NCBI GenBank assembly: GCA_964270895.1
Contig: OZ185444.1
Source of the DNA: Podarcis filfolensis
Lineage: Eukaryota
Reading direction: 5' to 3' (one strand)
DNA: 64,000 nt
The notes under the pieces are model-generated. The model was given only the letters and a program-made list of their open reading frames with translations, did not search any database and was not told the DNA's origin. Position 1 is the first letter of the stretch; every line of letters begins with the position of its first letter. Shown piece after piece: positions 9,107 to 54,860 of the stretch. The translations under genes and the position numbers were made by a program.

Positions 9107-9297
9107 CAGTGGCGTAGCGTGGGGGGTGCAGGGGGGGCCGGCCGCACCGGGCACAACATCTGGGGGTTAGGGTTAGGGGGCGCAAATCCACGGGTTAGGG
9201 GGCGCAAATCCATGGGTTAGGGGGCGCAAATCCATGGGTTAGGGGGCGAAAATTACTTGCCTTGCCCCGGGTGCTGACAACCCACGCTACGCCCCTG
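9107..9297. mobile_element. hAT-type MITE with internal 22-bp TTAGGG-containing tandem repeats
   Basis: TIRs CAGTGGCGTAGCGTGGG / CCCACGCTACGCCCCTG; perfect 8-bp TSD CTTCAGTT (9099-9106 and 9298-9305). Confidence 0.9.
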
Positions 9298-9948: not shown

Positions 9949-10124
9949 GACAGTGGAATTTGCTGCCAAGGAGTGTGGTGGAGTCTCCTTCTTTGGAGGT
10001 CTTTAAGCAGAGGCTTGACAACCATATGTCAGGAGTGCTCTGATGGTGTTTCCTGCTTGGCAGGGGGTTGGACTCGATGGCCCTTGTGGTCTCTTCCAAC
10101 TCTATGATGATTCTATGATTCTAT
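9949..10124 (+). mobile_element. CR1 LINE, 5'-truncated 3' end (young subfamily)
   Basis: GACAGTGGAATTTGCTGCCAAGGAGTGTGGTGGAG...GGTCTCTTCCAACTCTATGA(TTCTATGA)n, the CR1 terminal octamer tail; nearly identical to 30308-30514. Confidence 0.9.
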
Positions 10125-16811: not shown

Positions 16812-17395
16812 TGTTGTTGTTTAGTCGTTTAGTCGTGTCCGACTCTTCGTGACCCCATGGACCAGAGCACGCCAGGCACTTCTGTCCTCCACTGCCTCCT
16901 GCAGTTTGATCAAACTCATGCTGGTAGCTTCAAGAACACCATCCAACCATCTCATCCTCTGTCGTATCCTTCCCCTTGTGCCCTCCATCTTTCCCAACAT
17001 CAGGGTCTCTTTTCCAGGGAGTCTTCTCTTCTCATGAGGTGGCCAAAGTATTGGAGCCTCAGCTTCACGATCTGTCCTTCCAGTGAGCACTCAGGGCTGA
17101 TTTCCTTCAAAATGGATACGTTTGATCTTCTTGCAGTCCATGGGACTCTCAAGAGTCTCCTCCAGCACCATAATTCAAAAGCATCAATTCTTCGGCAATC
17201 AGCCTTCTTTATGGTCCAGCTCTCACTTCCATACATCACTACTGGGAAAACCATAGCTTTAACTATACGGACCTTTGTTGGCAAGGTGATGTCTCTACTT
17301 TTTAAGATGCTGTCTAGGTTTGTCATTGCTTTTCTCCCAAGAAGCAGGCGTCTTTTAATTTCGTGACTGCTGTCACCATCTGCAGTGATCATGGA
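16812..17395 (-). mobile_element. Bov-B (RTE clade) LINE, 5'-truncated, RT C-terminus with a frameshift
   Basis: Minus-strand ORFs MITADGDSSHEIKRRLLLGRKAMTNLDSILKSRDITLPTKVRIVKAMVFPVVMYGSESWT... and ...RMRWLDGV...AWRALVHGVTKSRTRLND are characteristic Bov-B ORF ends; (CAA)n tail; 11-bp TSD TTCCCACCACT (16801-16811 and 17396-17406). Confidence 0.95.
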
Positions 17396-22539: not shown

Positions 22540-24471
22540 GGGCTGACTTTCTGTTTTGCGGCGAACCAGGCAAGTCATCCTCTTGGAAGCTCCGGTGCCC
22601 AGTAGGGATCCCAGACAGAGATTAATGGGGGGGGTAAAGGGCATGCCTCCCCTAACCCATGGGTCGACAAACTAAGGCCCGTGGGCCAGATCAGGCCCAA
22701 TTGCCTTCTGGATCCAGCCTGCGGACGGTCCGGGAATTGCCGTGTGGTTCACCAGCGTGCATGTTCTTTCCCTCTCGCTCACATGGCGGCAGCGGCACCT
22801 CCTCCCTCCCTCCCTCCCTCCCTCCCTCCTCCTGGCTTCTCCCCGCCCTGCCTAGAGGAGGAAGGGGGCTGGACTTTGTTGGTGACAGCAGCAAGAGCAG
22901 CAGCAGCGCTGGAGTAGCCACCATTTTAAGCAGCCCCTCTCCGGAGCCCTTTCACATGCGGCTCATCATCCCTCCGCTGCTGCAGCTGACTCAAGGTCGT
23001 CCATTAATGTGTTTTTGTGTTGTTGTTTTTTGGCCTGTGAGCAGGGGTGAAAATCCCCATCTCCCAGATGAAAAGGCTTCATCCAAGGACAGCCCCAACA
23101 AGCTACCGTGGTGAGCTGTGGAATACCTTTGAATTCGGACATACCGTATTTAGCAAGCGAAGAGGCACCCCCCTGAAAAGATCCTGATTTATGCTGCAGG
23201 AGAAAATTATCTGTTTGGAAAGGTTTGGAAAGAATGAAAGACACTAATTTCTGCTTTGTTTGAACAGTGGAAGGAGGGGAGGCAATATTTTAAGTCATGG
23301 AGTTTTTTTTTCAGAATCTGCGTTATATATCCTCCCCTAAAGCAATGGAATGTAAAGTTTTCAGGAAGAGTGGACTTTAAAGATACCTCTTTGTGATGGA
23401 TTTATTTTATAACTAAGGACTTTGCCTGAGCCTAACAACCTTGAAGGACTTTTGAGGGATTTTGACCACCCCTTGGAACTTTGTATTGTGAAATTAAAAT
23501 AATAAAGAAAAGATTGGTAACAACTGGATTGACTGTCTGTTAAGCACTCGGAAGACAATAAACTGTGGAGCTGGATGTAAACAGAGGATCGGTAGAATGA
23601 ACTGCAGGAAGATTTATTAGTTTAGGGGGAAGGATGGAGAGGAAACATGGATTTTGTTGAGATTACATCACACACACCCCTTGAAGCTTGAAGCTGGAAA
23701 TGAAAACAGTGAAAGCGACAGGATGGGCCACAGGGTATACCATCTTGATGACTTCTGAGACTTTCAGACAGAGAAGAAGAGAGATGGATTATGTTTCTTT
23801 ATTAATGATTTGTTAATGAGCTGTTTGTATGTAAAATTGAGGATTAAATTTGGCGAAAAGTGAGGGGTGGGTGACGCTGGGAGATTGGCAGTGTGTGAGA
23901 GGGGGAATGTGTATTATATATTTATAGGGAAATTCTAGGGGTTTCATTTTCACCCTCTGCACACAGCACCAGTGAGGCTGGAGCCAGATGTCAGACAGCA
24001 ATGTTCAAGGCCATGTTAGGGAGGAATGTGTGTATGATGTCTGGGAGGAAGCAAGATCTCTCGTTCTCAGGCAAAGTGTTGCTCAAGAGGTATCAGAAGG
24101 AAATGTTTGAAAATTGAGGAATGACTATTATAGATAGATTACAGAGGATTTACTCTACTCAACTATTTTGAGGACAGGTTATAACTATGTATAACAGCCA
24201 TAGGAGAAATTGGTAATTGAACAGGTGATGTGTATGGAGAAGGGGTGAGTGTATTTTGAAATGATAGGGAAGTTATTTTATTGGGAGCAGAAAAGGAGGG
24301 AGGAAAATAGAGGGGACATCTGGGGGTGAGGCGGGAAGTCAGCTTTTAAATTTGCATTAATTTGGTGACAATTTGTTTAAAATATGGGAAATAAATAAAA
24401 ATAATTGGCAAAAAAAGAAAATTCAGAAAAGGAAGAAGAAGAAGAAGAAGAAGAAGAAGAAGAAGAAGAAG

Positions 24472-24497
<26 letters not shown>
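22540..24497 (+). mobile_element. Old non-autonomous L1-like element with a hAT fragment inserted at ~22658-23035
   Basis: Starts GGGGCTGACTTTCTGTTTTGCGGCG (L1-like 5' end); ends AAATAAATAAAAAT... A-rich tail and (GAA)n; flanked by GAAGTTGGAG at 22530-22539 and 24498-24507; no RT-encoding sequence recognisable. Confidence 0.55.
22659..23035 (+). mobile_element. hAT-type element fragment (CATGGGT..CAAACTAAGGCCC family), one end only
   Basis: The first ~80 bp match the MITE at 40342-40594; no second TIR or TSD found; the right boundary is approximate. Confidence 0.55.

Positions 24498-24500
<3 letters not shown>
24432..24500. repeat. (GAA)23 microsatellite
   Basis: Uninterrupted GAA units, 69 bp. 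Confidence 0.95.
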
Positions 24501-24502
<2 letters not shown>

Positions 24503-25152
24503 TGGAGTTTAAACTGTTGGGCTTTTAAAGAAAGGATTTGGTTTCCCTGAGAACAAACCATCATTTCCTCAGAGTGTTCCTCCAAGTAGACAACCCACCC
24601 CCCCCAGCAGTTCAAGAAAGATGAGGAACATTTGTTCCATCTCCAGTAGACATCTGAGCCTCCTGAATATCACAGGGGAGAGCCATGAGTTATATTTTAT
24701 GTTTTACCAGAAGAATGGAAAAGCATGAGTTATTCCTGCTTGTTTTGCTGCTCCTGGCTGTCTGCTCATAACTGAAAGTCCATGATTAATTTGCCCATCA
24801 GACACTTTCACCGTTCTCACCAGTTTGGTTCCTGGGTAGATTATTTCACTCTTTCAAATATATGCTAATGGATTAAAGGAGGTATTAAAGATGGCTTGGT
24901 GGGTAAACAGAGAACAAGTGAATCATACGTATTATCTGAATTAATTAATTTGGATTGGAAGAGTGTCACCTTGATGAATAAGGGTGTAGGTTCTACCAGG
25001 AGGTGAAGTCTTCTTCCTATGAAGGAGCAACAAAGATAGCTGAGTCCAAGTGCTCCTCCTCTAGAATGTGTGCATACTTTCTCACACTTCAAAGTCTTCT
25101 CCCAGAAACATAGCATGCTAGGGATCTTGCCTACTCTTCCTTTGAACTGGAG

Positions 25153-26625: not shown

Positions 26626-26905
26626 CACAGAAGCATAGAATAGTAGAATTGCTGGGAGGTGCCCCAAGGGTCATCTAGTCCAACCCTCTGTAATGCAGGA
26701 ATATCAACTAAAGCATCCATGACAGATAGTCATCCAACCTCTGCTTCAAAACCTCCAAGAAAGGACAGTCCACCACCTCCCAAGGGAGACTGTTCCACAG
26801 TCGAACAGTTCTTACTGTCAGAAAGTCCTTCCTAGTGTTTAGTCAGAATCTCCTTTCTTGTAATTTGAAGCCATTGGTTGGAGTCCTCCCCTCTAGAGCA
26901 GGAGA
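26626..26905 (-). mobile_element. CR1 LINE 3' end
   Basis: CATAGAAT...GGTCATCTAGTCCAACC...CTGTTCCACAGTCGAACAGTTCTTACTGTCAGAAAG...; reverse complement of the CR1 ORF2 end and 3' UTR. Confidence 0.8.
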
Positions 26906-30307: not shown

Positions 30308-30514
30308 TCATAGAATCATAGAATCATAGAGTTGGAAGAGACCACAAGGGCCGTCGAGTCCAACCCCCTGCCAAGCAGGAAACACCATCAGAGCACTCCT
30401 GACATATGGTTGTCAAGCCTCTGCTTAAAGACCTCCAAAGAAGGAGACTCCACCACACTCCTTGGCAGCAAATTCCACTGTCGAACAGCTCTTACTGTCA
30501 GCTCTTACTGTCAG
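30308..30514 (-). mobile_element. CR1 LINE, 5'-truncated 3' end (young subfamily)
   Basis: (TCATAGAA)n tail followed by a near-exact reverse complement of 9949-10124; 13-bp tandem duplication CTCTTACTGTCAG at its 5' junction (30489-30514). Confidence 0.9.
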
Positions 30515-32644: not shown

Positions 32645-33967
32645 ACAGGCAAAAGGAAGACTAGAGAATATTATGGGAATTGAAACAGAAATTATAAAAA
32701 AATAATAATTTGGGGATATGGATATCAGCTAAGAACTTAAACCTTTTCCAGGATAACTATGTTAAAATCTGGAATGAAATCAAAAAAGATTTGGAAAAAT
32801 TGAGTGGAATGAACCTTTCTTTGTTAGGAAGAATATCCACAGTTAAAATGAATGTGTTGCCTAAAATGTTCTTATTTCAAACACTGGCGGTGATAAATAG
32901 CCCAAACTGTTTCAAACAATGAAAAAAAGACATGACAAATTTCATCTGGCAGAGGAAAAACTCCAAATTAATTATAAAAATCTAACCGACGTAAGAGAGT
33001 TTTGCCCTTCCAGACCTCAGACTTTATTATGAGGCAGTGTGCCTCTGCTGGATGAAAGAATGGATGAAGCCAAGGGATACCAACATTTTAAACTGAGAAG
33101 GTTTTGACCTACGCTTTGGATGGCATGCATATCTGCAAATCAAATCCAGGGTGACAAATCCAGGGTGCACAAAGGTTTCCAAAACCATGTCATAAGAAGT
33201 ATATACAGAGTTTGGCAGAGACACAAAGATCTTTTAGAGAGCAAAACCCCAAAATGTATCACCAACGGAGGCAGTCTCAGTGAAAAGGTTGAACATGGTC
33301 AAGAAGTGGACCACTTTTAAAGACCTTATAGAATTTAAAGAAGGAGTTCACCTGAAAAAAGAGAAGAGATTTTGGATACTATAGACTGGTTTCAGTATTT
33401 TCAAGTGAACAAGTTATTTAAAAGAGATAAGGAAAGGGGATCTGTGGAAATGAGTTCAGAATTTGAAAAAATTGCAGTAGGAAAGGATGACGAATTAATC
33501 TCGAAAATTTATAAACTGTTACTGGAGTGAGAGACCAAAGATGAGATGGTAAAGGCAACTATGACAAAATGGGCTATAGATATTGGTTACAACATAGAAT
33601 TGTCTGCATGGGAAAAACTATGAGGGGAAAAACATGAATTTCTCTGCCTGCTATCTTATTAAGGAAAACTTACAAAAGATGATATACCGGTAGTACTTGA
33701 CACCCAGCAAATTAGTGAAAATGTACAAAAAAGGGGCTCATTTATGCTGGAAGTGCCATGAGGTAGAGGGAACTCTTAATTCATATGTGGTGGTTGTGTA
33801 AGTACGCTAGAGAGTTTGGGGAAATGATTCATACAGAATTAAAAAAGATTCTAAAACTCACATTTCCCAAAAGACCAGAGGCCTTTTTATTAGGGATAAT
33901 AGATAATGACATTCCAAAAAAAAAGCACTCAATATCTTTTTGTATGCGACCACTGCAGCTAGAATAG
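32645..33967 (+). mobile_element. Old L1 (LINE-1) ORF2 C-terminal half, decayed, left part
   Basis: Residual frames ...GIWIS...NLSLLGRISTVKMNVLPKM(L)FLFQ... (post-RT L1 motif), FALPDLRLYY, and the Cys-rich CWKC...GT...MWWLC domain; many stops and frameshifts; interrupted at ...ATTAARIV. Confidence 0.85.
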
Positions 33968-34839
33968 TACAGTGGTACCTTGGTTCCCAAACAGCTTAGC
34001 TGTTGAACAAATCGGCTCCCAAACGCTGCAAAGCTGGAAGTAAGTGTTCTGGACTTCTGGGTTGGCGCCTCCGGTAATGGCGGAGCTCCTCCGATCGGGA
34101 GGAACTTGCTCCGTGAAAAGCAGGGTCTAACCGCCACGGCGAAGGCGGAGACCCATAGAAATCACAGGCGGGAGAAGCCTGTGAACTTGAGATTCGGCTG
34201 GCACCTTTTGCGCCTTCCCTACTCGCGGGGAAACCCTGTTTTGGGGATCCGGAGCGACGTGGGGTGAGTGGCGCAGTGCTTTGAATCGACTGCTTCTTTC
34301 ACGGAGTGAAGCCGCATTGCTGCTGCCAGAGAGCGCTGACTTTTTCCTGTGGACAATTGGACCTTAAACAACTACCCGTGAGTAGATTGGAAAATTTGGA
34401 TCTTCAAATATTTTAATTTGGCAACAAAGCGGGAAGGCTCTAAACAGGAAGTCCGCCTTCCGCTTTTGTAAACAGACTGAAGCAAAGACGTTACAAACTA
34501 AAGTCTCTGAAAGTTTTTGATAAAGGATTAAAATTCCATCGGTTAAAAATACAAAACCCCCTTGGAAGCAGGAGAAGAGGGGGGAAGTCGTGAACCTAGT
34601 GGGAACCTGCAGGAGAGAGTGAAAAGCAAACTACCACTGCTCTGAACCTGGGAATGGTCTGCCTGATGACGTTTGGGGAAGGTTCATTGACAGAACGGAT
34701 CTGACAGTTACTTAAAATTGGAAAGATACTGTTTCCACTGATCTCGTCTGAGTTTATCAAAGGGAGGAAAAAAATAACTGAAAATCGAAACTGTTTTTGT
34801 GCTTGAAAGAATTGATACAAGTTGAGACTGTTTCCCTCT

Positions 34840-35928
34840 GGTGGCCACCAGGGGGCGCATTGGAAGATGGCCGACAATAACATCTCTCTGACCCACACGA
34901 GGTAATTTAGGGGCTGCTATGGGAAGTATGCAGCCTTCCCTCCCCACCAGGGTGTGGTGGGGTGCTGCCTGGCCAGCGGTGTTCACAAGGCACCCCCTGA
35001 TCCAAGAGATGGGGGTGCTGAACACTTGGCACGAGCCCTCGGTGAAGTCAGCTCTTCCTGACGCCGATTCCGATTAGCGCGTGCTGGTTGCTTCAGCCCG
35101 GAATTATAATTGGAAACAGATGAATTGGAATTGAGGCTGAAGCACATATATCAAGTAAAGCTCGACGATAAGGCTGCTGAATAATGGATCTCTGCGACCG
35201 AGAGCGACGGACGGATAAGTAAATCTTTTGATGTGTCGTCACCAAGAGACTGTACGTTTGGAACAAAGGGGGGGTGGAGGAAAAACTTTTTCTTTTCCCT
35301 ATATGATGTGACAAAAATAACCCTCCACCCCAGAAAGAAAGAAATAAGATCGTTGCGTCTTTTAAGATTCATAAGCAGAAGTTTAAGAACTGTGTGGGAG
35401 ATGGAAAATAATTGGTGAACGCTGAGGAATTTTTATGACACAGTTAAAAAATGGCGTCTCGCCAAGACAGGCTGCTGGAGAAAAAAAGAGATGGGGGAGG
35501 AGATTCAGGAATGTTGGAGAAGAGAAGGAGTATGGAACTGAAAGCTTGACCTGACAGAGCCCCCTGATCTATTTGATTTATTTGGCTAGCCTGGAAAATA
35601 AAAGGACAATGAAGAACCCACACAGAGAAGCCAGCTTTTAGTCTGCTTGTGAGAATCATCAGAGATCGCAAAGAAAGGAACGTATGATAACAAACAAGAT
35701 GAAGAAAATACAAAGGACTATCTGGATTGAACTGGATAGAACTGATTAATTAATGCAGCAAAATAAGTGATGTCTGGACTTATCCGGAACTTTGGACTCG
35801 TGCGGAGCTTGATATATGGGTACACCCAAAAAATTTAAAATTTGGCTGTATAATTTGGAACCAATGTGATTTGAATAATGTGATGTGATTGGCCTGTTAA
35901 TAAAAATTATTAAAAAAAGAGAGAGAGA
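34840..35928 (+). mobile_element. 1.1-kb non-autonomous L1-like element nested in the previous element
   Basis: Perfect 16-bp TSD GAGACTGTTTCCCTCT (34824-34839 and 35929-35944); 5' GGGGGCGCATTGGAAGATGGCCGA; CpG-rich leader; AATAAA, A-run and (GA)n tail; no long ORF. Confidence 0.85.
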
Positions 35929-36043
35929 GAGACTGTTTCCCTCTAGAGGGAGTATGTGAAACTGTTACAGGAGTGTAACAGGGTAAGCTCCAGCTGCAAG
36001 ATAAAGTTTCTGAGAATCAGAGATTGACCTTGGACTATTCAAA

Positions 36044-36706
36044 ATGCTGATAGGAGAAGGTATTGTGACTGTATTATATAAGATAAACCATTCACTTGAA
36101 CAGCTGCATAAAAAGGCAGATGACATGATTTCCAAAATTGACAGCCGGGAACAGAAAGTGACCAATTTGAATCAAAAAGCAAGCAACAATACAGAAATAA
36201 TTCAGGACTTGGAACAGGAATATACCTTGGTAGGACAAATGGTGGAGGAAAAGGAGAAAGATGCCGTTGCGAAACCTAAGGTAGTTCAAGCAGGATCCTC
36301 AGTTCTACAGAAGCAAATTGAGGATTATAAATTGAGGCCTTGCATGATTGATTCCAGCAAAAGCCAGATTTTGAGGATTGGACCCTGGCTTGGACTGAAG
36401 AACGAAAGTTGGAAAGATCCCTTTATTCAGGGACCAACTGACTTTTGGGACATGGGTTTGGGCCTGGAGGAGCTTGAAGCTTTGGGGGCCTATGGATTTG
36501 GAGGAATCCTGAAATACGTCCTGAAATACCATATGGACCTTAGTTTCAATTATGGAAACTTGGCTGAGCTGTTCAGAAGGAAGAAAAGTTTTGTTTGGTT
36601 GGAGTTTTCCCGAGATTTGCAGCTGAGCATTAAAGAATATGAAGAAGATCTGCAGAAGGGACTTGGAAAAGAATTAAGAGCCTCGGATATAAGATCTCCA
36701 GGTTGA
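36044..36706 (+). CDS. TE-encoded 220-aa ORF, putative L1 ORF1p-like protein with a predicted N-terminal coiled coil
   Basis: Open frame at the ORF1 position of the 34053-37282 element; heptad-like stretch LYKINHSLEQLHKKADDMISKIDSREQKVTNLNQKASNNTEIIQDLEQEY. Homology of the C-terminal half to ORF1p was not verified. Confidence 0.5.
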   Translation: MLIGEGIVTVLYKINHSLEQLHKKADDMISKIDSREQKVTNLNQKASNNTEIIQDLEQEYTLVGQMVEEKEKDAVAKPKVVQAGSSVLQKQIEDYKLRPCMIDSSKSQILRIGPWLGLKNESWKDPFIQGPTDFWDMGLGLEELEALGAYGFGGILKYVLKYHMDLSFNYGNLAELFRRKKSFVWLEFSRDLQLSIKEYEEDLQKGLGKELRASDIRSPG

Positions 36707-37460
36707 TGGACTATATGGATCTGACGGAAAGGACTGGCAGAATCTGAAACCAGGGAGAAGAGACGGTGGAAGAAGATTGGGAAGTTAAAGTTTATATTTA
36801 GAAATTTTGTAAAATTAATGACTGTTAGAAAAACCGTGGAATTATATCATATGGATTTAGTAGAAATGTTAGAAGAAGTTAAGTATAGATAAGTAATTTA
36901 GTCTTAAAGGGAAATAAGGTTAAAAAAATATGTTATTTACAAGATGATAAAAAACAGAGAAAGATGGAAAGGATTTGCTGAAACAATTAGAAGAACTGGA
37001 ATACAAAAAGGGAGGTGTGAGGAAGTCGAGGAACAAGGAAATGAAGGATAGAATATGGAAAAGGAGAGATGTATTTTAAACTGTTTTTGTTTTAATTTAT
37101 GTGTTTAATCTAATGGGTTTGGGTTGGGTTTTATAATATTTGTATACTGTATTGTATTGTGGTGTTTCTTACTTTTTTTTTTGTTTTTTTTCCTTTCTCT
37201 TTCTTTCTTGTCTTTATTTTTCTTTTTTCTTCTTTTTCTGTAACTTTCAAAAGTAATAAATATTTTTTTTTTTTTTAAAAAAGGAAGTTAGTGTTCTGGT
37301 TTGCGAACTTTTTTTGGAAGCCAAACATCCGACGCAGCTTCCACCTGAGTGCAGAAAGCTCCTGCAGCCAATTGGAAGTCACACCTTGGTTTTCAAATGG
37401 TTTTGGGAGTCAAGCAGACTCCCGGAACAGATTAAGTTCAAGAACCAAGGTACCACCGTA

Positions 37461-37855
37461 TATTTAAAAATGGAAAGAAGAGGTACCCACGAAGATTTGG
37501 CAGAACAAATTGATAGAATTCATAGATCTAGCAACCATGGCCATGAAGCTAAGGAATAAGGATGAGTTAAAGAGAAGAGAAGAGTGGAGGTGTTTTGGAA
37601 ATTGTTTTAGAGGGTACAATATACAATTTAATCTAAAAGTAGGAGTTACCATATGAAGAGCAGATAACATCAAAAAGGAAGACTTGACATGATAATGGTG
37701 AAATATCAGGATATGCAGCAGATCAAGATTTCCCTAGAATGCCACAGAAAGATGGATTGGGAAGTCTTTGGAAAAGAGATGAGATGGATACTGTATGATG
37801 TGTGTATAAAAGTCGTTAAAATTGCATAAATAAAAGTTGTTGTTTTTTTAAAAAG
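37461..37855 (+). mobile_element. Old L1 ORF2 C-terminus and 3' UTR, right part (continues 32645-33967)
   Basis: Resumes with ...WKEEVPTKIWQNKLIEFIDLATMAMKLRNK..., the usual L1 ORF2 end, then a 3' UTR with AATAAA at ~37829. Confidence 0.75.
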
Positions 37856-48365: not shown

Positions 48366-48478
48366 ATAAGACCTAGTTGGGCATCCTGTTCTCACAGTGG
48401 GGAAACCAGCAAGCAGGATCAGAGCCCAAGAGCAGCCCCCCCCTCCCGGTTTGCAGCAACTGGCAGATCCGAAGCAAT
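48366..48478 (-). mobile_element. CR1 3' fragment
   Basis: CATCCTGTTCTCACAGTGG..AAACCAGCAAGCAGGAT...TTTGCAGCAACTGG; reverse complement of the 13258-13480 family. Confidence 0.55.
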
Positions 48479-48486
48479 GCTGGGGT

Positions 48487-48633
48487 CAGGGGGGCCAACT
48501 TGAATAAAATATGGGAGGGTCTCAGGTACACCTTGGAATGCCAATGCCCATCAACTTTTTTGGGGGGACTGGCCCCCTCAAATATTTTATTGGTGTGTGA
48601 AGGGACTGCGGCCCCTGGGAGTTGGCTCCTATG
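48487..48633. mobile_element. hAT-type MITE abutting the MAGI2 CpG island
   Basis: Ends CAGGGGGGCCAACT / AGTTGGCTCCTATG; 8-bp TSD GCTGGGGT/GCTGGGGC (48479-48486 and 48634-48641). Confidence 0.75.
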
Positions 48634-49306
48634 GCTGGGGCCATCTGCCCCCTTCCGGGATCCTTTGGCCTGGATGGTTCGCCGCAGATGCGCGCCGGCT
48701 CCCTTCAGAATCGCGCCTTTGCGCAGCGCGGGCGCGGGGGCTGCGCGAGGCTGGCTCCGTTTCGTGCGTGTGCGCGCGGCGGGGGGGGGGGGGCGGGCGG
48801 GCTACGTCTCCTTCGCCCAGCGCGCCAAACCTGAGGGAGAGCGAGAGACCGCGAGAGCGCGCGCGCGCCGGAGCCTGAGGCGCCGTTTTCCTCAGCCTGG
48901 CGGCGCTTGGCCGTGCCTGCCTCGGCGGCGGATCCGTCTTCTCTCCTCCCTCCCTCCCCACCCACCCGCCGCTGGCTGCTCCCCGCCTTCTCCCTTCGCT
49001 TCCCTTCCCTCCCTTCCCTGCTGCTTTTGCCAGGCAAGCCAGCCTCCCTCTCGGCCTTCACTACCGGGTCAGAGGCTCCGTCTGAGGAGAGCGAGTGCGC
49101 GAGCCAGGCAGGCAGGCAGGCAGACGCCCCCCCCCCGCACACATCCACGCCGCCGCCGCCTCCTACTACTCCAGCAGCAGCAGCAGCATCCACACGCAGC
49201 CCGCCCTCTCGCTCTCCCCCCTCAGGCTCGCCAGCCAGTTACTGTAAAACTAGTCCGTACTCTCCCTCTCTCTCGCACACGCAGCATCCTGGCTGCCGCA
49301 GCTGCC

Positions 49307-49339
49307 ATGGCCAGCAGCTCCCCGCGCACTCGCAGCTAG
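49307..49339 (+). promoter_or_regulatory. Candidate upstream ORF (MASSSPRTRS*) in the MAGI2 5' leader
   Basis: GCTGCC-ATG-G context at 49307, stop TAG at 49337-49339; the only ATG seen between it and the main ATG. Whether it is in the mRNA depends on the TSS, which is unknown. Confidence 0.5.
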
Positions 49340-49664
49340 AGCGGCAGAGAGGGGGGGGAGCCGCCGCCTCAGCCCCGTCCCTCGCCCCGCTCCATCCTCC
49401 CTGCTCTCCGCCGGCCCAGACGGCAGGCGGGAGTAGCGGCAGCGGCAGGCGAGAGCAGCCCCCTCGCCCGCCCCTCTCGGCAGCCTTCCTCCTCCTCCTC
49501 CTCCTCCTCGCCAGCCCCACACGGGCTAAAGGAAACTCCAAGGACACCCCGAGGCAAAGGAGAGCGAGCGAGCGAGCGAGCGAGCGGGGGAAGGAGCGAG
49601 GAGGGAGGCGGGCAGCAGGCAGGCGGGCGAGGGAGAAGCGCCCATCCCTTTCCCCCTCACGGCA

Positions 49665-49968
49665 ATGTCCAAGGGCTTGAAGAAGAAAAGCCACTGGACG
49701 AGCCGAGTCCATGAGTGTGTCATCGTGAGGAGCCAGGAGGGCGGGCTGGGCTTCGAGCTCAAGGGGGGCGCCGAGAACGGGCAGTTCCCGTACCTGGGGG
49801 AGGTCAAGCCCGGCAAGGTGGTCTACGAGAGCGGAGGCAGCAAGTTGGTGCCCGAGGAGCTGCTGCTGGAGGTGAACGAGACCCCCGTGGCCGGGCTCAC
49901 CATCCGGGATGTGCTGGCCGTGATCAAGCACTGCAAGGACCCCATCCGGCTCAAGTGCGTCAAGCAAG
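49665..49968 (+). CDS. MAGI2: MAGI2 coding exon 1 (N-terminal PDZ0 domain of membrane-associated guanylate kinase inverted 2)
   Basis: Translates MSKGLKKKSHWTSRVHECVIVRSQEGGLGFELKGGAENGQFPYLGEVKPGKVVYESGGSKLVPEELLLEVNETPVAGLTIRDVLAVIKHCKDPIRLKCVKQ-G, which matches the vertebrate MAGI2 N-terminus as I recall it (MSKSLKKKSHWTSKVHE...GGAENGQFPYLGEVKPGKV...KHCKDPLRLKCVKQG). In-frame upstream stop TAA at 49527. Ends at a canonical donor CAAG|GTAAGC (phase 1). The ORF-track extension to 50201 is intron read-through. Confidence 0.96.
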
Positions 49969-50899
49969 GTAAGCGCGGGGCGGGCGGGGGGGGGGAGGGG
50001 GTTGGCGGGCGAAGGGCCCGAAGAAGAAGAAGAAGACGGCGGGGCGCGAGACGCGGCAACTTCTCCGCTTCGGGGCAGTTTGGCCGCCGCCGCCGCCCCC
50101 GACCCCCTTCCTTTGGCTGGGGAAGGGGAGGCAGCCGCGGCGGCGGCGCACAGCCTTCCTGGATCGCGCTGCGTGTCTCGTGTGCCGCACGGCAGAATTA
50201 AATGTGCGTCAGCGGCGGAGTGCCTGGAGAGCCGCGGGGAGCGGAGAAAGTTCGGCCGGGCCCGAAGAGGGAGCAGGCCGGCGGGGAAAGGGCTGGGGAG
50301 CGAGGGGTGCGCAGGACGCAAATGTGCAGAATCTGCCCCCCTCCGCCCAAAAAGCGAGTGCTTCTGAGCAAGTGCAGAGCGCCACCTTTTTGCTCAGGAC
50401 AGATGCAGGGCCATCCACACTTACTTGGGAGTAAGCTCTTTTTCTGTCCTCGGTGCGTGGGACTTGCTTCTGAGTAAACAGAAAGGGAAAAGGCTGTAAG
50501 GCTGCCCGCCGCTGCACCGTTACCTGAAAGTGGATCCCGCTGAGGGCTGGGATCTGGCTCTACGAGGAAGGGCAGCATGGATCCAGGGCAGACTTAAGCC
50601 TCAGCACCGAGACTCTCCTCCCCGCCACACACCCATTTTCAGCCCGGGACGCGAGTAGAAGGAAGGCATTCCAGGGCATCTTCTCCTGGCAAGGGGAGCG
50701 GTGGCACCGATGCATGCCGTGGAAGAAAGAGGGAGGGAGGAAGGAAGGAAGGAGGGGGAGAAGTGGGGCTAAACATTATGACAGCTCTGCAAGAACGCGG
50801 CTTCCCTGGAAAGCATCCCCGGTGACTAACCCTCCCGGGGAGTCGTAGTAGCCGCGCCGGGGACCAGCCTGCGCTAAGGCGCCGCAACGTGCCAAGGCG

Positions 50900-54797: not shown

Positions 54798-54860
54798 TAG
54801 AGCCTGGTGTGCTCTTGTCTATAGGGTCACGAAGAGTCGGACATGACTAAACAACAACAA
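54798..54860 (+). mobile_element. Very short Bov-B 3' tail insertion
   Basis: GCCTGGTGTGCTCTTGTCTATAGGGTCACGAAGAGTCGGACATGACTAAACAACAACAA; flanks AGTCTGCATT / AGCCTGCATT. Confidence 0.8.

What the first reader, a model, noticed from the sequence alone, without database searches (positions are those of the whole stretch)
34840..35928. 1.1-kb mini-L1 whose 5' end mirrors the human L1HS start (G-run + YY1 site)
Seen: perfect 16-bp TSD; starts GGGGGCGCATTGGAAGATGGCCGA; CpG-rich leader, a second YY1-like AAAATGGCG at 35447-35455 opening only a ~34-codon stub, AATAAA and A-tail. Known: human L1HS begins GGGGGAGGAGCCAAGATGGCCGA, and that YY1 site positions transcription initiation. Here AAGATGGCC sits at +14 from the G-run, about the same spacing. 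Inference: a non-coding, promoter-bearing L1-mobilised element (a Pol II SINE-like parasite), showing conserved or convergent YY1-anchored L1 promoter architecture across amniotes. Retained CpGs suggest it is young.
Basis: partly seen in the sequence, partly recalled or inferred. Interest (0 to 1): 0.72.

Follow-up and report, generated by a model that had tools for sequence, protein, structure and literature searches.

The report
Lizard non-coding retroposon with CTCF/YY1 head
A young 1.1-kb retrocopy with no gene sits inside a lizard L1-type element; its first 35 bases hold a textbook CTCF site followed by a YY1 box, so it looks like a non-autonomous retroposon that could spread insulator sites, though I could not confirm other copies here.

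Summary
The insertion is real. It spans window 34840-35928 (1089 nt, + strand), has a perfect 16-bp target-site duplication, AATAAA/ATTAAA, an A7(GA)5 tail and an L1-endonuclease-like target (TT|GAGA).

It has no ORF over 52 codons, no Pfam, Rfam or tRNA match, and six internal T-runs. A Pol II-type, non-coding, polyadenylated RNA was therefore copied by LINE machinery.

The element begins 11 nt upstream of the G-run, and that run lies inside an exact 17-mer of the CTCF consensus (TGGCCACCAGGGGGCGC, +3 to +19). AAGATGGCCGA (YY1 core GCCAT) follows at +25.

"Mini-L1" is not supported. There is no DNA or translated similarity to any L1 in the window, and the head differs from the published lizard L1 5' consensus, which the host element does carry.

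I could not test copy number, the decisive point. The window holds no second copy.

This scan noted the same kind of element on other DNA of this genome, called a wall lizard in a follow-up note: at least five similar 1.1-1.2-kb notes, two naming a CTCF plus YY1 head. These are unchecked leads.

Best reading (0.55): a young full-length member of an undescribed L1-dependent, non-coding retroposon family.

The parts
34824..34839 (+). 5' copy of the target-site duplication GAGACTGTTTCCCTCT. It is preceded by TT, so the top strand reads TT|GAGA, like the L1 endonuclease site TT|AAAA.
34840..35928 (+). The inserted element, 1089 nt. Non-coding, A-rich on the + strand (A 32%, C 18%), CpG observed/expected 0.61.
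34842..34858 (+). Exact 17-mer of the CTCF core consensus TGGCCACCAGGGGGCGC (17 of the 19 consensus positions; core CCACCAGGGGGCGC at 34845-34858). It lies at +3 to +19 of the element.
   Evidence: one exact match in the window; expected 1.3e-6; consensus taken from bioRxiv 10.1101/024620
34864..34874 (+). YY1-type box AAGATGGCCGA (reverse strand GGCCATCTT, core GCCAT), at +25 to +35. It overlaps an ATG in good Kozak context that opens only 12 codons.
   Evidence: YY1 core GCCAT from PMC11602158; mammalian L1 consensus from PMC5381506
34898..34906 (+). GAG|GTAATT, a splice-donor-like site just after the 12-codon ORF. It is weak evidence, since such matches are common by chance.
35040..35240 (+). 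The most CpG-dense segment (CpG observed/expected 1.1-1.7).
35448..35456 (+). Second YY1-type box AAAATGGCG (reverse strand CGCCATTTT). Not significant on its own.
35451..35549 (+). 32-codon ORF plus stop, in Kozak context AAAAATGGCG. No homologue and no domain were found for any ORF of the element.
35899..35914 (+). Polyadenylation signals: AATAAA at 35899-35904 and ATTAAA at 35909-35914.
35912..35928 (+). Tail of A7 followed by (GA)5, which runs into the GAGA that starts the TSD.
35929..35944 (+). 3' copy of the target-site duplication.
34053..37282 (+). Host of the insertion: an RT-less L1 derivative with its own 17-bp TSD (one mismatch, at 34036-34052 and 37283-37299). Its 5' tip, GACTTCTGGGT-N14-ATGGCG, resembles the published lizard L1 consensus. 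The element lies in its 5'UTR, in the same orientation.
   Evidence: PMC5381506

Best explanation
This is a young, full-length copy of a lizard-specific, non-coding, non-autonomous retroposon.

Proposed mechanism: a roughly 1.07-kb RNA is made by RNA polymerase II and cleaved and polyadenylated after its own AATAAA/ATTAAA. It is then reverse-transcribed into a nicked TT|GAGA target by the proteins of an active LINE, most likely L1, acting in trans.

Its first 35 nt carry a consensus CTCF site and then a YY1 box. Both lie downstream of the start point, so they travel with every full-length copy. By analogy with the YY1 box of mammalian L1, they could fix initiation at the first base and so let daughter copies be transcribed again.

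Each full-length insertion also plants an oriented CTCF motif.

Shown here: the insertion, its hallmarks, its lack of coding capacity, its lack of similarity to L1, and the motifs.

Inferred: Pol II transcription from +1, use of L1 proteins, factor binding, and family status.
For: - Insertion hallmarks: a perfect 16-bp TSD, target TT|GAGA, AATAAA/ATTAAA 13 and 3 nt before an A7(GA)5 tail.
- Not Pol III-type: six runs of 4 or more T on the sense strand, no tRNA and no Rfam match.
- Non-coding: no ORF over 52 codons, no Pfam hit, and no homologue for two ORFs tried.
- Not L1-like: no nucleotide or translated similarity to the L1 sequences of the window.
- Head motifs: the exact CTCF 17-mer at +3, expected 1.3e-6 per window, and AAGATGGCSG at +25, expected 0.13 per window.
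- Young: CpG observed/expected 0.61 against 0.29 for the window.
- Literature: YY1 at the L1 5' tip dictates where transcription starts (PMC11602158, PMC5381506).
- Leads only, not tested: at least five first-reader notes on other pieces of the same genome describe complete non-coding retroposons noted as 1.1-1.2 kb; several mention TSDs and two name a CTCF plus YY1 head. A sixth note reports a near-perfect CTCF site at the tip of an inserted element.
Against: - No second copy was seen by me. There is none in the 64-kb window, and no tool gave access to the rest of the genome.
- A family is therefore supported only by unchecked notes, whose sequences I could not compare with this one.
- Factor binding, the transcription start and the identity of the mobilising LINE are inferred.
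- The tail is short and partly (GA)n, which poly(A) polymerase does not make.
- A donor-like GAG|GTAATT right after a Kozak ATG could mean the head is a cellular first exon.
Confidence: 0.55

Rival explanations
1. It is a processed retrocopy of a cellular Pol II transcript: a lncRNA, or an intron-retaining, prematurely polyadenylated isoform of a protein-coding gene. The source gene has a CTCF site and a YY1 box just downstream of its start site. Copies, whether one or several, all come from that source gene. The element is not a self-propagating family.
For: - YY1 boxes that overlap a Kozak ATG just downstream of the start site are typical of cellular promoters (my own knowledge).
- Here AAGATGGCC opens a 12-codon ORF that ends at a donor-like GAG|GTAATT, as an unspliced first exon plus intron would.
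- The CpG-rich first 400 nt resemble a promoter-proximal CpG island.
- No second copy lies in the window.
Against: - Several unchecked notes describe complete copies of about the same size elsewhere in the genome, two with the same kind of head. That many copies would be unusual for a retained-intron isoform.
- No ORF of the element has any homologue or domain.
- The donor-like site is a weak, common pattern.
Confidence: 0.27
2. It is an internally deleted L1, a true 'mini-L1': the 5'UTR and 3'UTR of an L1 lineage that happens not to be represented in this window, joined by a deletion that removed both ORFs.
For: - A-rich sense strand, CpG-rich 5' part, AATAAA plus tail.
- GGGGGC at +12 resembles the first six bases of the published lizard clade-2 L1 tip GGGNGCTGCGCATGC (PMC5381506).
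- RT-less L1 derivatives clearly do move in this genome: the host element here, and HAL1-like notes elsewhere.
Against: - No similarity to any L1 5'UTR, ORF or 3'UTR in the window at DNA or translated level.
- The head does not match the clade-1 consensus, and it matches the clade-2 consensus only over six bases, which do not lie at the element's tip.
- There is no pyrimidine-rich 3'UTR tract of the kind PMC5381506 describes for lizard L1 and the host shows.
Confidence: 0.13
3. The motifs are chance matches or an assembly artefact, and the region has no biological meaning as a unit.
For: Short YY1 patterns are common: GCCATNTT occurs 19 times in the window.
Against: An exact 17-mer CTCF consensus is expected 1.3e-6 times per window. 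It sits 2 nt from the boundary of a TSD-flanked, tailed insertion. The boundaries are clean, and the host sequence continues across them.
Confidence: 0.03

Closest known systems
SVA elements of hominids (PMC3287187)
   Same: Non-coding, about 1-3 kb, Pol II-type with their own poly(A) signal, no Pol III head, flanked by L1-type TSDs, moved in trans by L1 proteins.
   Different: No sequence relation. No hexamer, Alu-like, VNTR or SINE-R modules. This element is unitary, has a CTCF plus YY1 head, and is in a squamate. Trans-mobilisation is shown for SVA but only inferred here.
CTCF-site-bearing SINEs of mammals, such as rodent B2 (Schmidt et al. 2012, PMC3368268)
   Same: A retroposon whose sequence contains a CTCF motif, so each insertion adds a potential oriented CTCF site.
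   Different: Those are short Pol III SINEs with the motif inside the body. Here the element is a 1.1-kb Pol II-type RNA with the motif at its very 5' tip, so 5'-truncated copies would lose it. My paper search found no report for reptiles.
5' terminus of mammalian L1 (G2-6(A/C)GGAGNCAAGATGGCGGA; YY1 box; PMC5381506, PMC11602158)
   Same: A G-run, then AAGATGGC(C/G)GA at nearly the same distance. The YY1 core GCCAT is in the same orientation close to the 5' end.
   Different: In L1 the G-run is the first base of the element. Here 11 more bases precede it, and the run is the core of a CTCF motif. The rest of the element shows no similarity to the lizard L1 sequences of this window.
5' terminus of lizard L1 clade 1 (GACTTCCGGTG-N8-ATGGCG; PMC5381506)
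   Same: An ATGGC(G/C) box lies 20-30 nt from the 5' end.
   Different: The tip GACTTCCGGTG is absent from the element, but it is present, as GACTTCTGGGT, in the host L1 derivative 800 nt upstream.
HAL1 / half-L1 and the RT-less L1 derivative that hosts this insertion
   Same: A non-autonomous passenger of L1 with L1-type ends.
   Different: Those keep an ORF1-type ORF and L1 UTRs. This element has no ORF and no L1 similarity.
Processed pseudogenes / retrocopies of Pol II transcripts
   Same: All structural hallmarks: TSD, poly(A) signal, tail, and a start at a defined 5' end.
   Different: No coding homology and no known parent gene. Apparent recurrence as same-sized copies rests on leads only.

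Membership tests
LINE-1 (internally deleted 'mini-L1') | Sequence homology of its ends to the 5'UTR and 3'UTR of an autonomous L1 | tested here: not met
   blastn (word 7) and tblastx against the rest of the window, which holds three L1-type pieces, gave nothing below E = 0.1. L1 lineages absent from the window could not be tested.
LINE-1 (internally deleted 'mini-L1') | Lizard L1 5' tip consensus: GACTTCCGGTG-N8-ATGGCG (clade 1) or GGGNGCTGCGCATGC (clade 2), both from PMC5381506 | tested here: not met
   The element starts GGTGGCCACCAGGGGGCGCATTGG. Only GGGGGC at +12 matches the first six bases of the clade-2 tip. The host element does carry the clade-1-like tip.
LINE-1 (internally deleted 'mini-L1') | Remnants of ORF1 or ORF2 | tested here: not met
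   No ORF over 52 codons. Pfam was empty for the two ORFs scanned (52 and 89 codons). tblastx against L1 ORF pieces in the window was empty.
L1-mobilised non-autonomous retroposon (SVA-like, Pol II type) | TSD of about 7-20 bp, a poly(A) signal and tail, and an endonuclease target resembling TT|AAAA | tested here: met
   16-bp perfect TSD, AATAAA/ATTAAA, A7(GA)5 tail, target TT|GAGA.
L1-mobilised non-autonomous retroposon (SVA-like, Pol II type) | No reverse transcriptase or endonuclease of its own | tested here: met
L1-mobilised non-autonomous retroposon (SVA-like, Pol II type) | Many dispersed copies with the same 5' and 3' ends and different TSDs | not testable with these tools
Protein-based look-ups were empty. 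The only support is unchecked notes of similar elements elsewhere in the genome.
SINE (Pol III) | A tRNA-, 7SL- or 5S-derived head with an internal promoter, and no internal T4+ terminators | tested here: not met
   No tRNA, no Rfam match at E up to 1, and six T4-5 runs on the sense strand.
CTCF binding site | Match to the core consensus TGGCCACCAGGGGGCGCTA | tested here: met
   17 of 19 positions as an exact 17-mer.
CTCF binding site | Occupancy by CTCF in lizard chromatin | not testable with these tools
   No ChIP or other binding data were available.
YY1-positioned internal promoter (as in human L1) | A YY1 core GCCAT with CTT flank near the 5' end, on the same strand as in L1 | tested here: met
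   GGCCATCTT on the reverse strand at +25 to +35.
YY1-positioned internal promoter (as in human L1) | Transcription initiating at the element's first base and dependent on the box | not testable with these tools
   No RNA or CAGE data could be reached.
Processed pseudogene of a protein-coding gene | Recognisable, possibly decayed coding homology to a parent gene | tested here: not met
   The ORF pieces tried found no homologue and no domain. A non-coding parent cannot be excluded.

The most novel reading that the evidence does not exclude
A squamate genome harbours an active or recently active family of Pol II-transcribed, non-coding retroposons whose portable 35-nt head pairs a consensus CTCF site with a YY1 box. 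L1 would then be scattering oriented CTCF/YY1 modules, which are potential insulators, loop anchors or promoters, through a lizard genome. That would be a non-mammalian and mechanistically different counterpart (Pol II, motif at the 5' tip) of the SINE-driven CTCF expansions of mammals.
Probability: 0.35. Interest if true: 0.7.

Novelty: new variant of a known kind. Interest (0 to 1): 0.5.

Why it matters
Retroposon-borne CTCF sites are known from mammals, where Pol III SINEs reshaped CTCF binding (PMC3368268). My paper search found no reptile counterpart.

A Pol II-type, L1-dependent passenger with a CTCF consensus and a YY1 box in its first 35 nt would matter for three reasons:
- It would be a squamate analogue of SVA.
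- It would show an internal, downstream-of-start promoter solution like that of L1, reached with unrelated sequence.
- It would supply young, datable, oriented CTCF motifs with which to test how genome folding evolves outside mammals.

If it is only a retrocopy of one cellular transcript, it is ordinary.

Tried and rejected
- **Other copies in the window.** blastn with word size 7 and tblastx against the window with the element masked found nothing.
- **Public reads.** I did not try again, so read laying could not be used. No depth, polymorphism or RNA evidence was obtained.
- **Protein tools as a proxy for DNA.** Five exact-product look-ups of element ORFs were empty. So were two homology searches with element ORFs and one with the host's 220-aa ORF. 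The collection seems not to hold such lizard ORFs.
- **The search of earlier findings by sequence.** Blank.
- **Small-RNA head.** Rfam at gathering score for the whole window and at E up to 1 for the region, plus ARAGORN, found nothing. A Pol III SINE is rejected.
- **Internal repeats or VNTR.** Only short chance-level repeats. An SVA-like composite structure is rejected.
- **Bacterial-type promoter and terminator scan.** Irrelevant and at chance level.
- **Scan of metagenome or genome contigs for the head.** Considered and not run.
- **Fetching the sibling copy said to lie next to NDUFS3/KBTBD4.** Not possible.

Full report
**What is in the sequence**

Window 34840-35928 (+) is a 1089-nt block bounded by a perfect 16-bp direct repeat, GAGACTGTTTCCCTCT, at 34824-34839 and 35929-35944.
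- The block ends with AATAAA (35899), ATTAAA (35909), seven A and (GA)5.
- The upstream repeat copy is preceded by TT, so the target on the top strand reads TT|GAGA. On the bottom strand this is TCTC/AA, a pyrimidine-run/AA version of the L1 endonuclease site TTTT/AA (established knowledge of L1 target-primed reverse transcription).
- The (GA)n of the tail can pair with that primer.
- These are the hallmarks of a LINE-mediated retrocopy of a polyadenylated RNA.
- The host sequence continues cleanly across the insertion.

**What it does not contain**
- The longest ORF is 52 codons.
- The two ORFs scanned (52 and 89 codons) have no Pfam domain. The two searched found no homologue.
- There is no tRNA and no Rfam match even at E up to 1.
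- There is no VNTR or other meaningful internal repeat.
- Six runs of four or five T on the sense strand argue against Pol III transcription. With the canonical poly(A) signals, this points to a Pol II product.
- The sense strand is A-rich (A 32%, C 18%).

**The 5' head**

It actually starts 11 nt earlier, at GGTGGCCACCAG, and the G-run begins at +12.
- **CTCF site.** Bases +3 to +19 are TGGCCACCAGGGGGCGC. This is an exact 17-mer of the CTCF core consensus 5'-TGGCCACCAGGGGGCGCTA-3', as quoted in bioRxiv 10.1101/024620. It is the only match in the window even when three mismatches are allowed. From base composition, an exact match is expected 1.3e-6 times per window.
- **YY1 box.** Five bases further on, at +25 to +35, lies AAGATGGCCGA. 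On the reverse strand this reads GGCCATCTT, with the YY1 core GCCAT (PMC11602158). The 10-mer AAGATGGCSG is expected 0.13 times per window and occurs once.
- **Comparison with mammalian L1.** Published mammalian L1s begin G2-6(A/C)GGAGNCAAGATGGCGGA, with CAAGATGGC as the YY1 site (PMC5381506). However, it depends on anchoring at an internal G-run. From the true 5' end the box is at +25.
- **Second box.** It opens 32 codons, not 34. The short pattern GCCATNTT occurs 19 times in the window, so this box carries no weight alone.

**Is it an L1?**

I found no evidence that it is.
- blastn (word 7) and tblastx of the element against the rest of the window found nothing. The window holds an older L1 (ORF2 end and 3'UTR, about 32645-37855) and an RT-less L1 derivative (34053-37282).
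- Boissinot and Sookdeo (PMC5381506) report that lizard clade-1 L1s begin GACTTCCGGTG-N8-ATGGCG and clade-2 L1s begin GGGNGCTGCGCATGC.
- The element has neither at its tip. Only GGGGGC at +12 matches six bases of the clade-2 tip.
- The host element, into whose 5'UTR this insertion went, begins GACTTCTGGGT-N14-ATGGCG (34052-34082). That is the lizard L1 tip with a YY1-core CGCCAT at about +26.
- So "a YY1-type box near the 5' end of lizard L1s" is visible in this window, but in the host. It is also already implicit in the published consensus.
- The element lacks the pyrimidine-rich 3'UTR tract that the paper describes for lizard L1 and that the host shows.

**Age**
- The TSD is perfect.
- CpG observed/expected is 0.61 for the element, 0.71 in its first 421 nt and 1.1-1.7 in 35040-35240.
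- This compares with 0.29 for the window and 0.25-0.29 for the older L1 parts.
- The host's 5'UTR is at 0.78, so it is young too.
- High CpG could also reflect lack of methylation rather than youth.

**Is it a family?**

This is the decisive point, and I could not test it.
- The window has no second copy.
I did not try further and could not use read laying.
- The other public collections are microbial, or hold no lizard ORFs of this kind.
- The scan's notebook shows that first readers noted the same kind of thing on other pieces of this genome, which a follow-up note calls a wall lizard.
- Five notes describe complete non-coding retroposons of about the same size (noted stretches of 1145-1190 letters): s1-279413, s1-307128, s1-287812, s1-287843 and s1-302390. 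Several mention TSDs. Two name a CTCF plus YY1 head and one a 5' YY1 motif.
- A sixth, s1-302418, reports a near-perfect CTCF site at the 5' tip of an inserted element.
- These are unchecked AI notes, and I could not see their sequences. They are leads, not evidence.
- If they are the same element, six or seven sightings in about 624 windows (about 40 Mb at 64 kb each) would suggest a few hundred full-length copies per genome. That is a rough extrapolation of my own.

**Most likely mechanism (confidence 0.55)**

A non-autonomous, non-coding retroposon family whose RNA is made by Pol II and polyadenylated at its own signal. It is then copied into TT|purine-run targets by L1 proteins in trans, as shown experimentally for SVA (PMC3287187).
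- The CTCF and YY1 sites lie downstream of the start point, so they are carried in the RNA.
- They could act as an internal promoter module that fixes initiation at base 1, as YY1 does in human L1 (PMC11602158, PMC5381506).
- The short, well-contexted ORFs (12 and 32 codons) might bring the RNA to ribosomes where L1 ORF2p is made. That is speculation.
- Every full-length insertion adds an oriented CTCF motif.

**Rivals**
- **Retrocopy of a cellular transcript (0.27).** The AAGATGGCC box doubles as a Kozak ATG whose 12-codon ORF ends at a donor-like GAG|GTAATT. This would fit an unspliced first exon plus intron. The match is weak, and the apparent recurrence argues against it.
- **A true internally deleted L1 from a lineage not in this window (0.13).** RT-less L1 derivatives clearly move in this genome.
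- **Chance or artefact (0.03).**

**Comparison with known systems**
- It works like SVA (Pol II-type, non-coding, L1-dependent) and like CTCF-bearing SINEs such as B2 (PMC3368268).
- It shares no sequence or modular structure with either.
- The motif sits at the extreme 5' tip of a Pol II-type element, and the host is a squamate.
- My paper searches found no description of such an element, nor of retroposon-borne CTCF sites in reptiles. The library has limited coverage, and Dfam/Repbase could not be consulted.

**Verdict**
- The "mini-L1 mirroring L1HS" reading is only partly supported.
- I rate it a new variant of a known kind, interest 0.5, pending the simple genome-wide copy search that I could not run.

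Noticed in passing
window 34036-37299: The host of the insertion is an RT-less L1 derivative (34053-37282) with a 17-bp TSD carrying one mismatch (GGAAGT[A/T]AGTGTTCTGG). Its 5' tip GACTTCTGGGT-N14-ATGGCG resembles the published Anolis clade-1 L1 tip GACTTCCGGTG-N8-ATGGCG, and CGCCAT there is a YY1 core. Its intact 220-aa ORF (36044-36706) has no Transposase_22 or other Pfam domain (only weak, sub-threshold hits to unrelated families such as ATG16) and no homologue in the protein collection.
   Followed up: partly
window 33968-34052 and 37283-37461: The L1 derivative sits inside a short element with terminal inverted repeats (TACAGTGGTACCTTGGTT ... AACCAAGGTACCACCGTAT). This looks like a MITE-type DNA transposon, itself inside the ORF2 end and 3'UTR of an older L1. 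The result is a four-level nest.
   Followed up: partly
window 9170-9253: A 22-bp unit GGGTTAGGGGGCGCAAATCCAC repeated about four times in tandem. It contains GGGGGCGC, but not the CTCF core spacing.
   Followed up: no
window 9949-10108 and 30323-30482: Two 160-nt stretches that are 99% complementary and 20 kb apart. They are probably two very young copies of a SINE in opposite orientation. Related, more diverged pieces lie at 26653, 42371 and 5471.
   Followed up: no
window 24394-24504: Another retroposon 3' end: AATAAA, a short A-run, then a long (AAG)n microsatellite. Short A-runs followed by purine microsatellites may be the usual tail of LINE-type insertions in this genome.
   Followed up: no
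window 48400-50300: A strong CpG island (GC 69%, CpG observed/expected 0.76) with long spurious ORFs on both strands. It is probably a gene promoter or first exon.
   Followed up: no
window 16824-16880 and 54799-54855: Inverted copies (88% complementary) of a stretch containing GTCCGACTCTTCGTGACCCCATGGAC, which resembles a BovB/Sauria-SINE-type sequence. That resemblance is from my own knowledge and was not tested.
   Followed up: no
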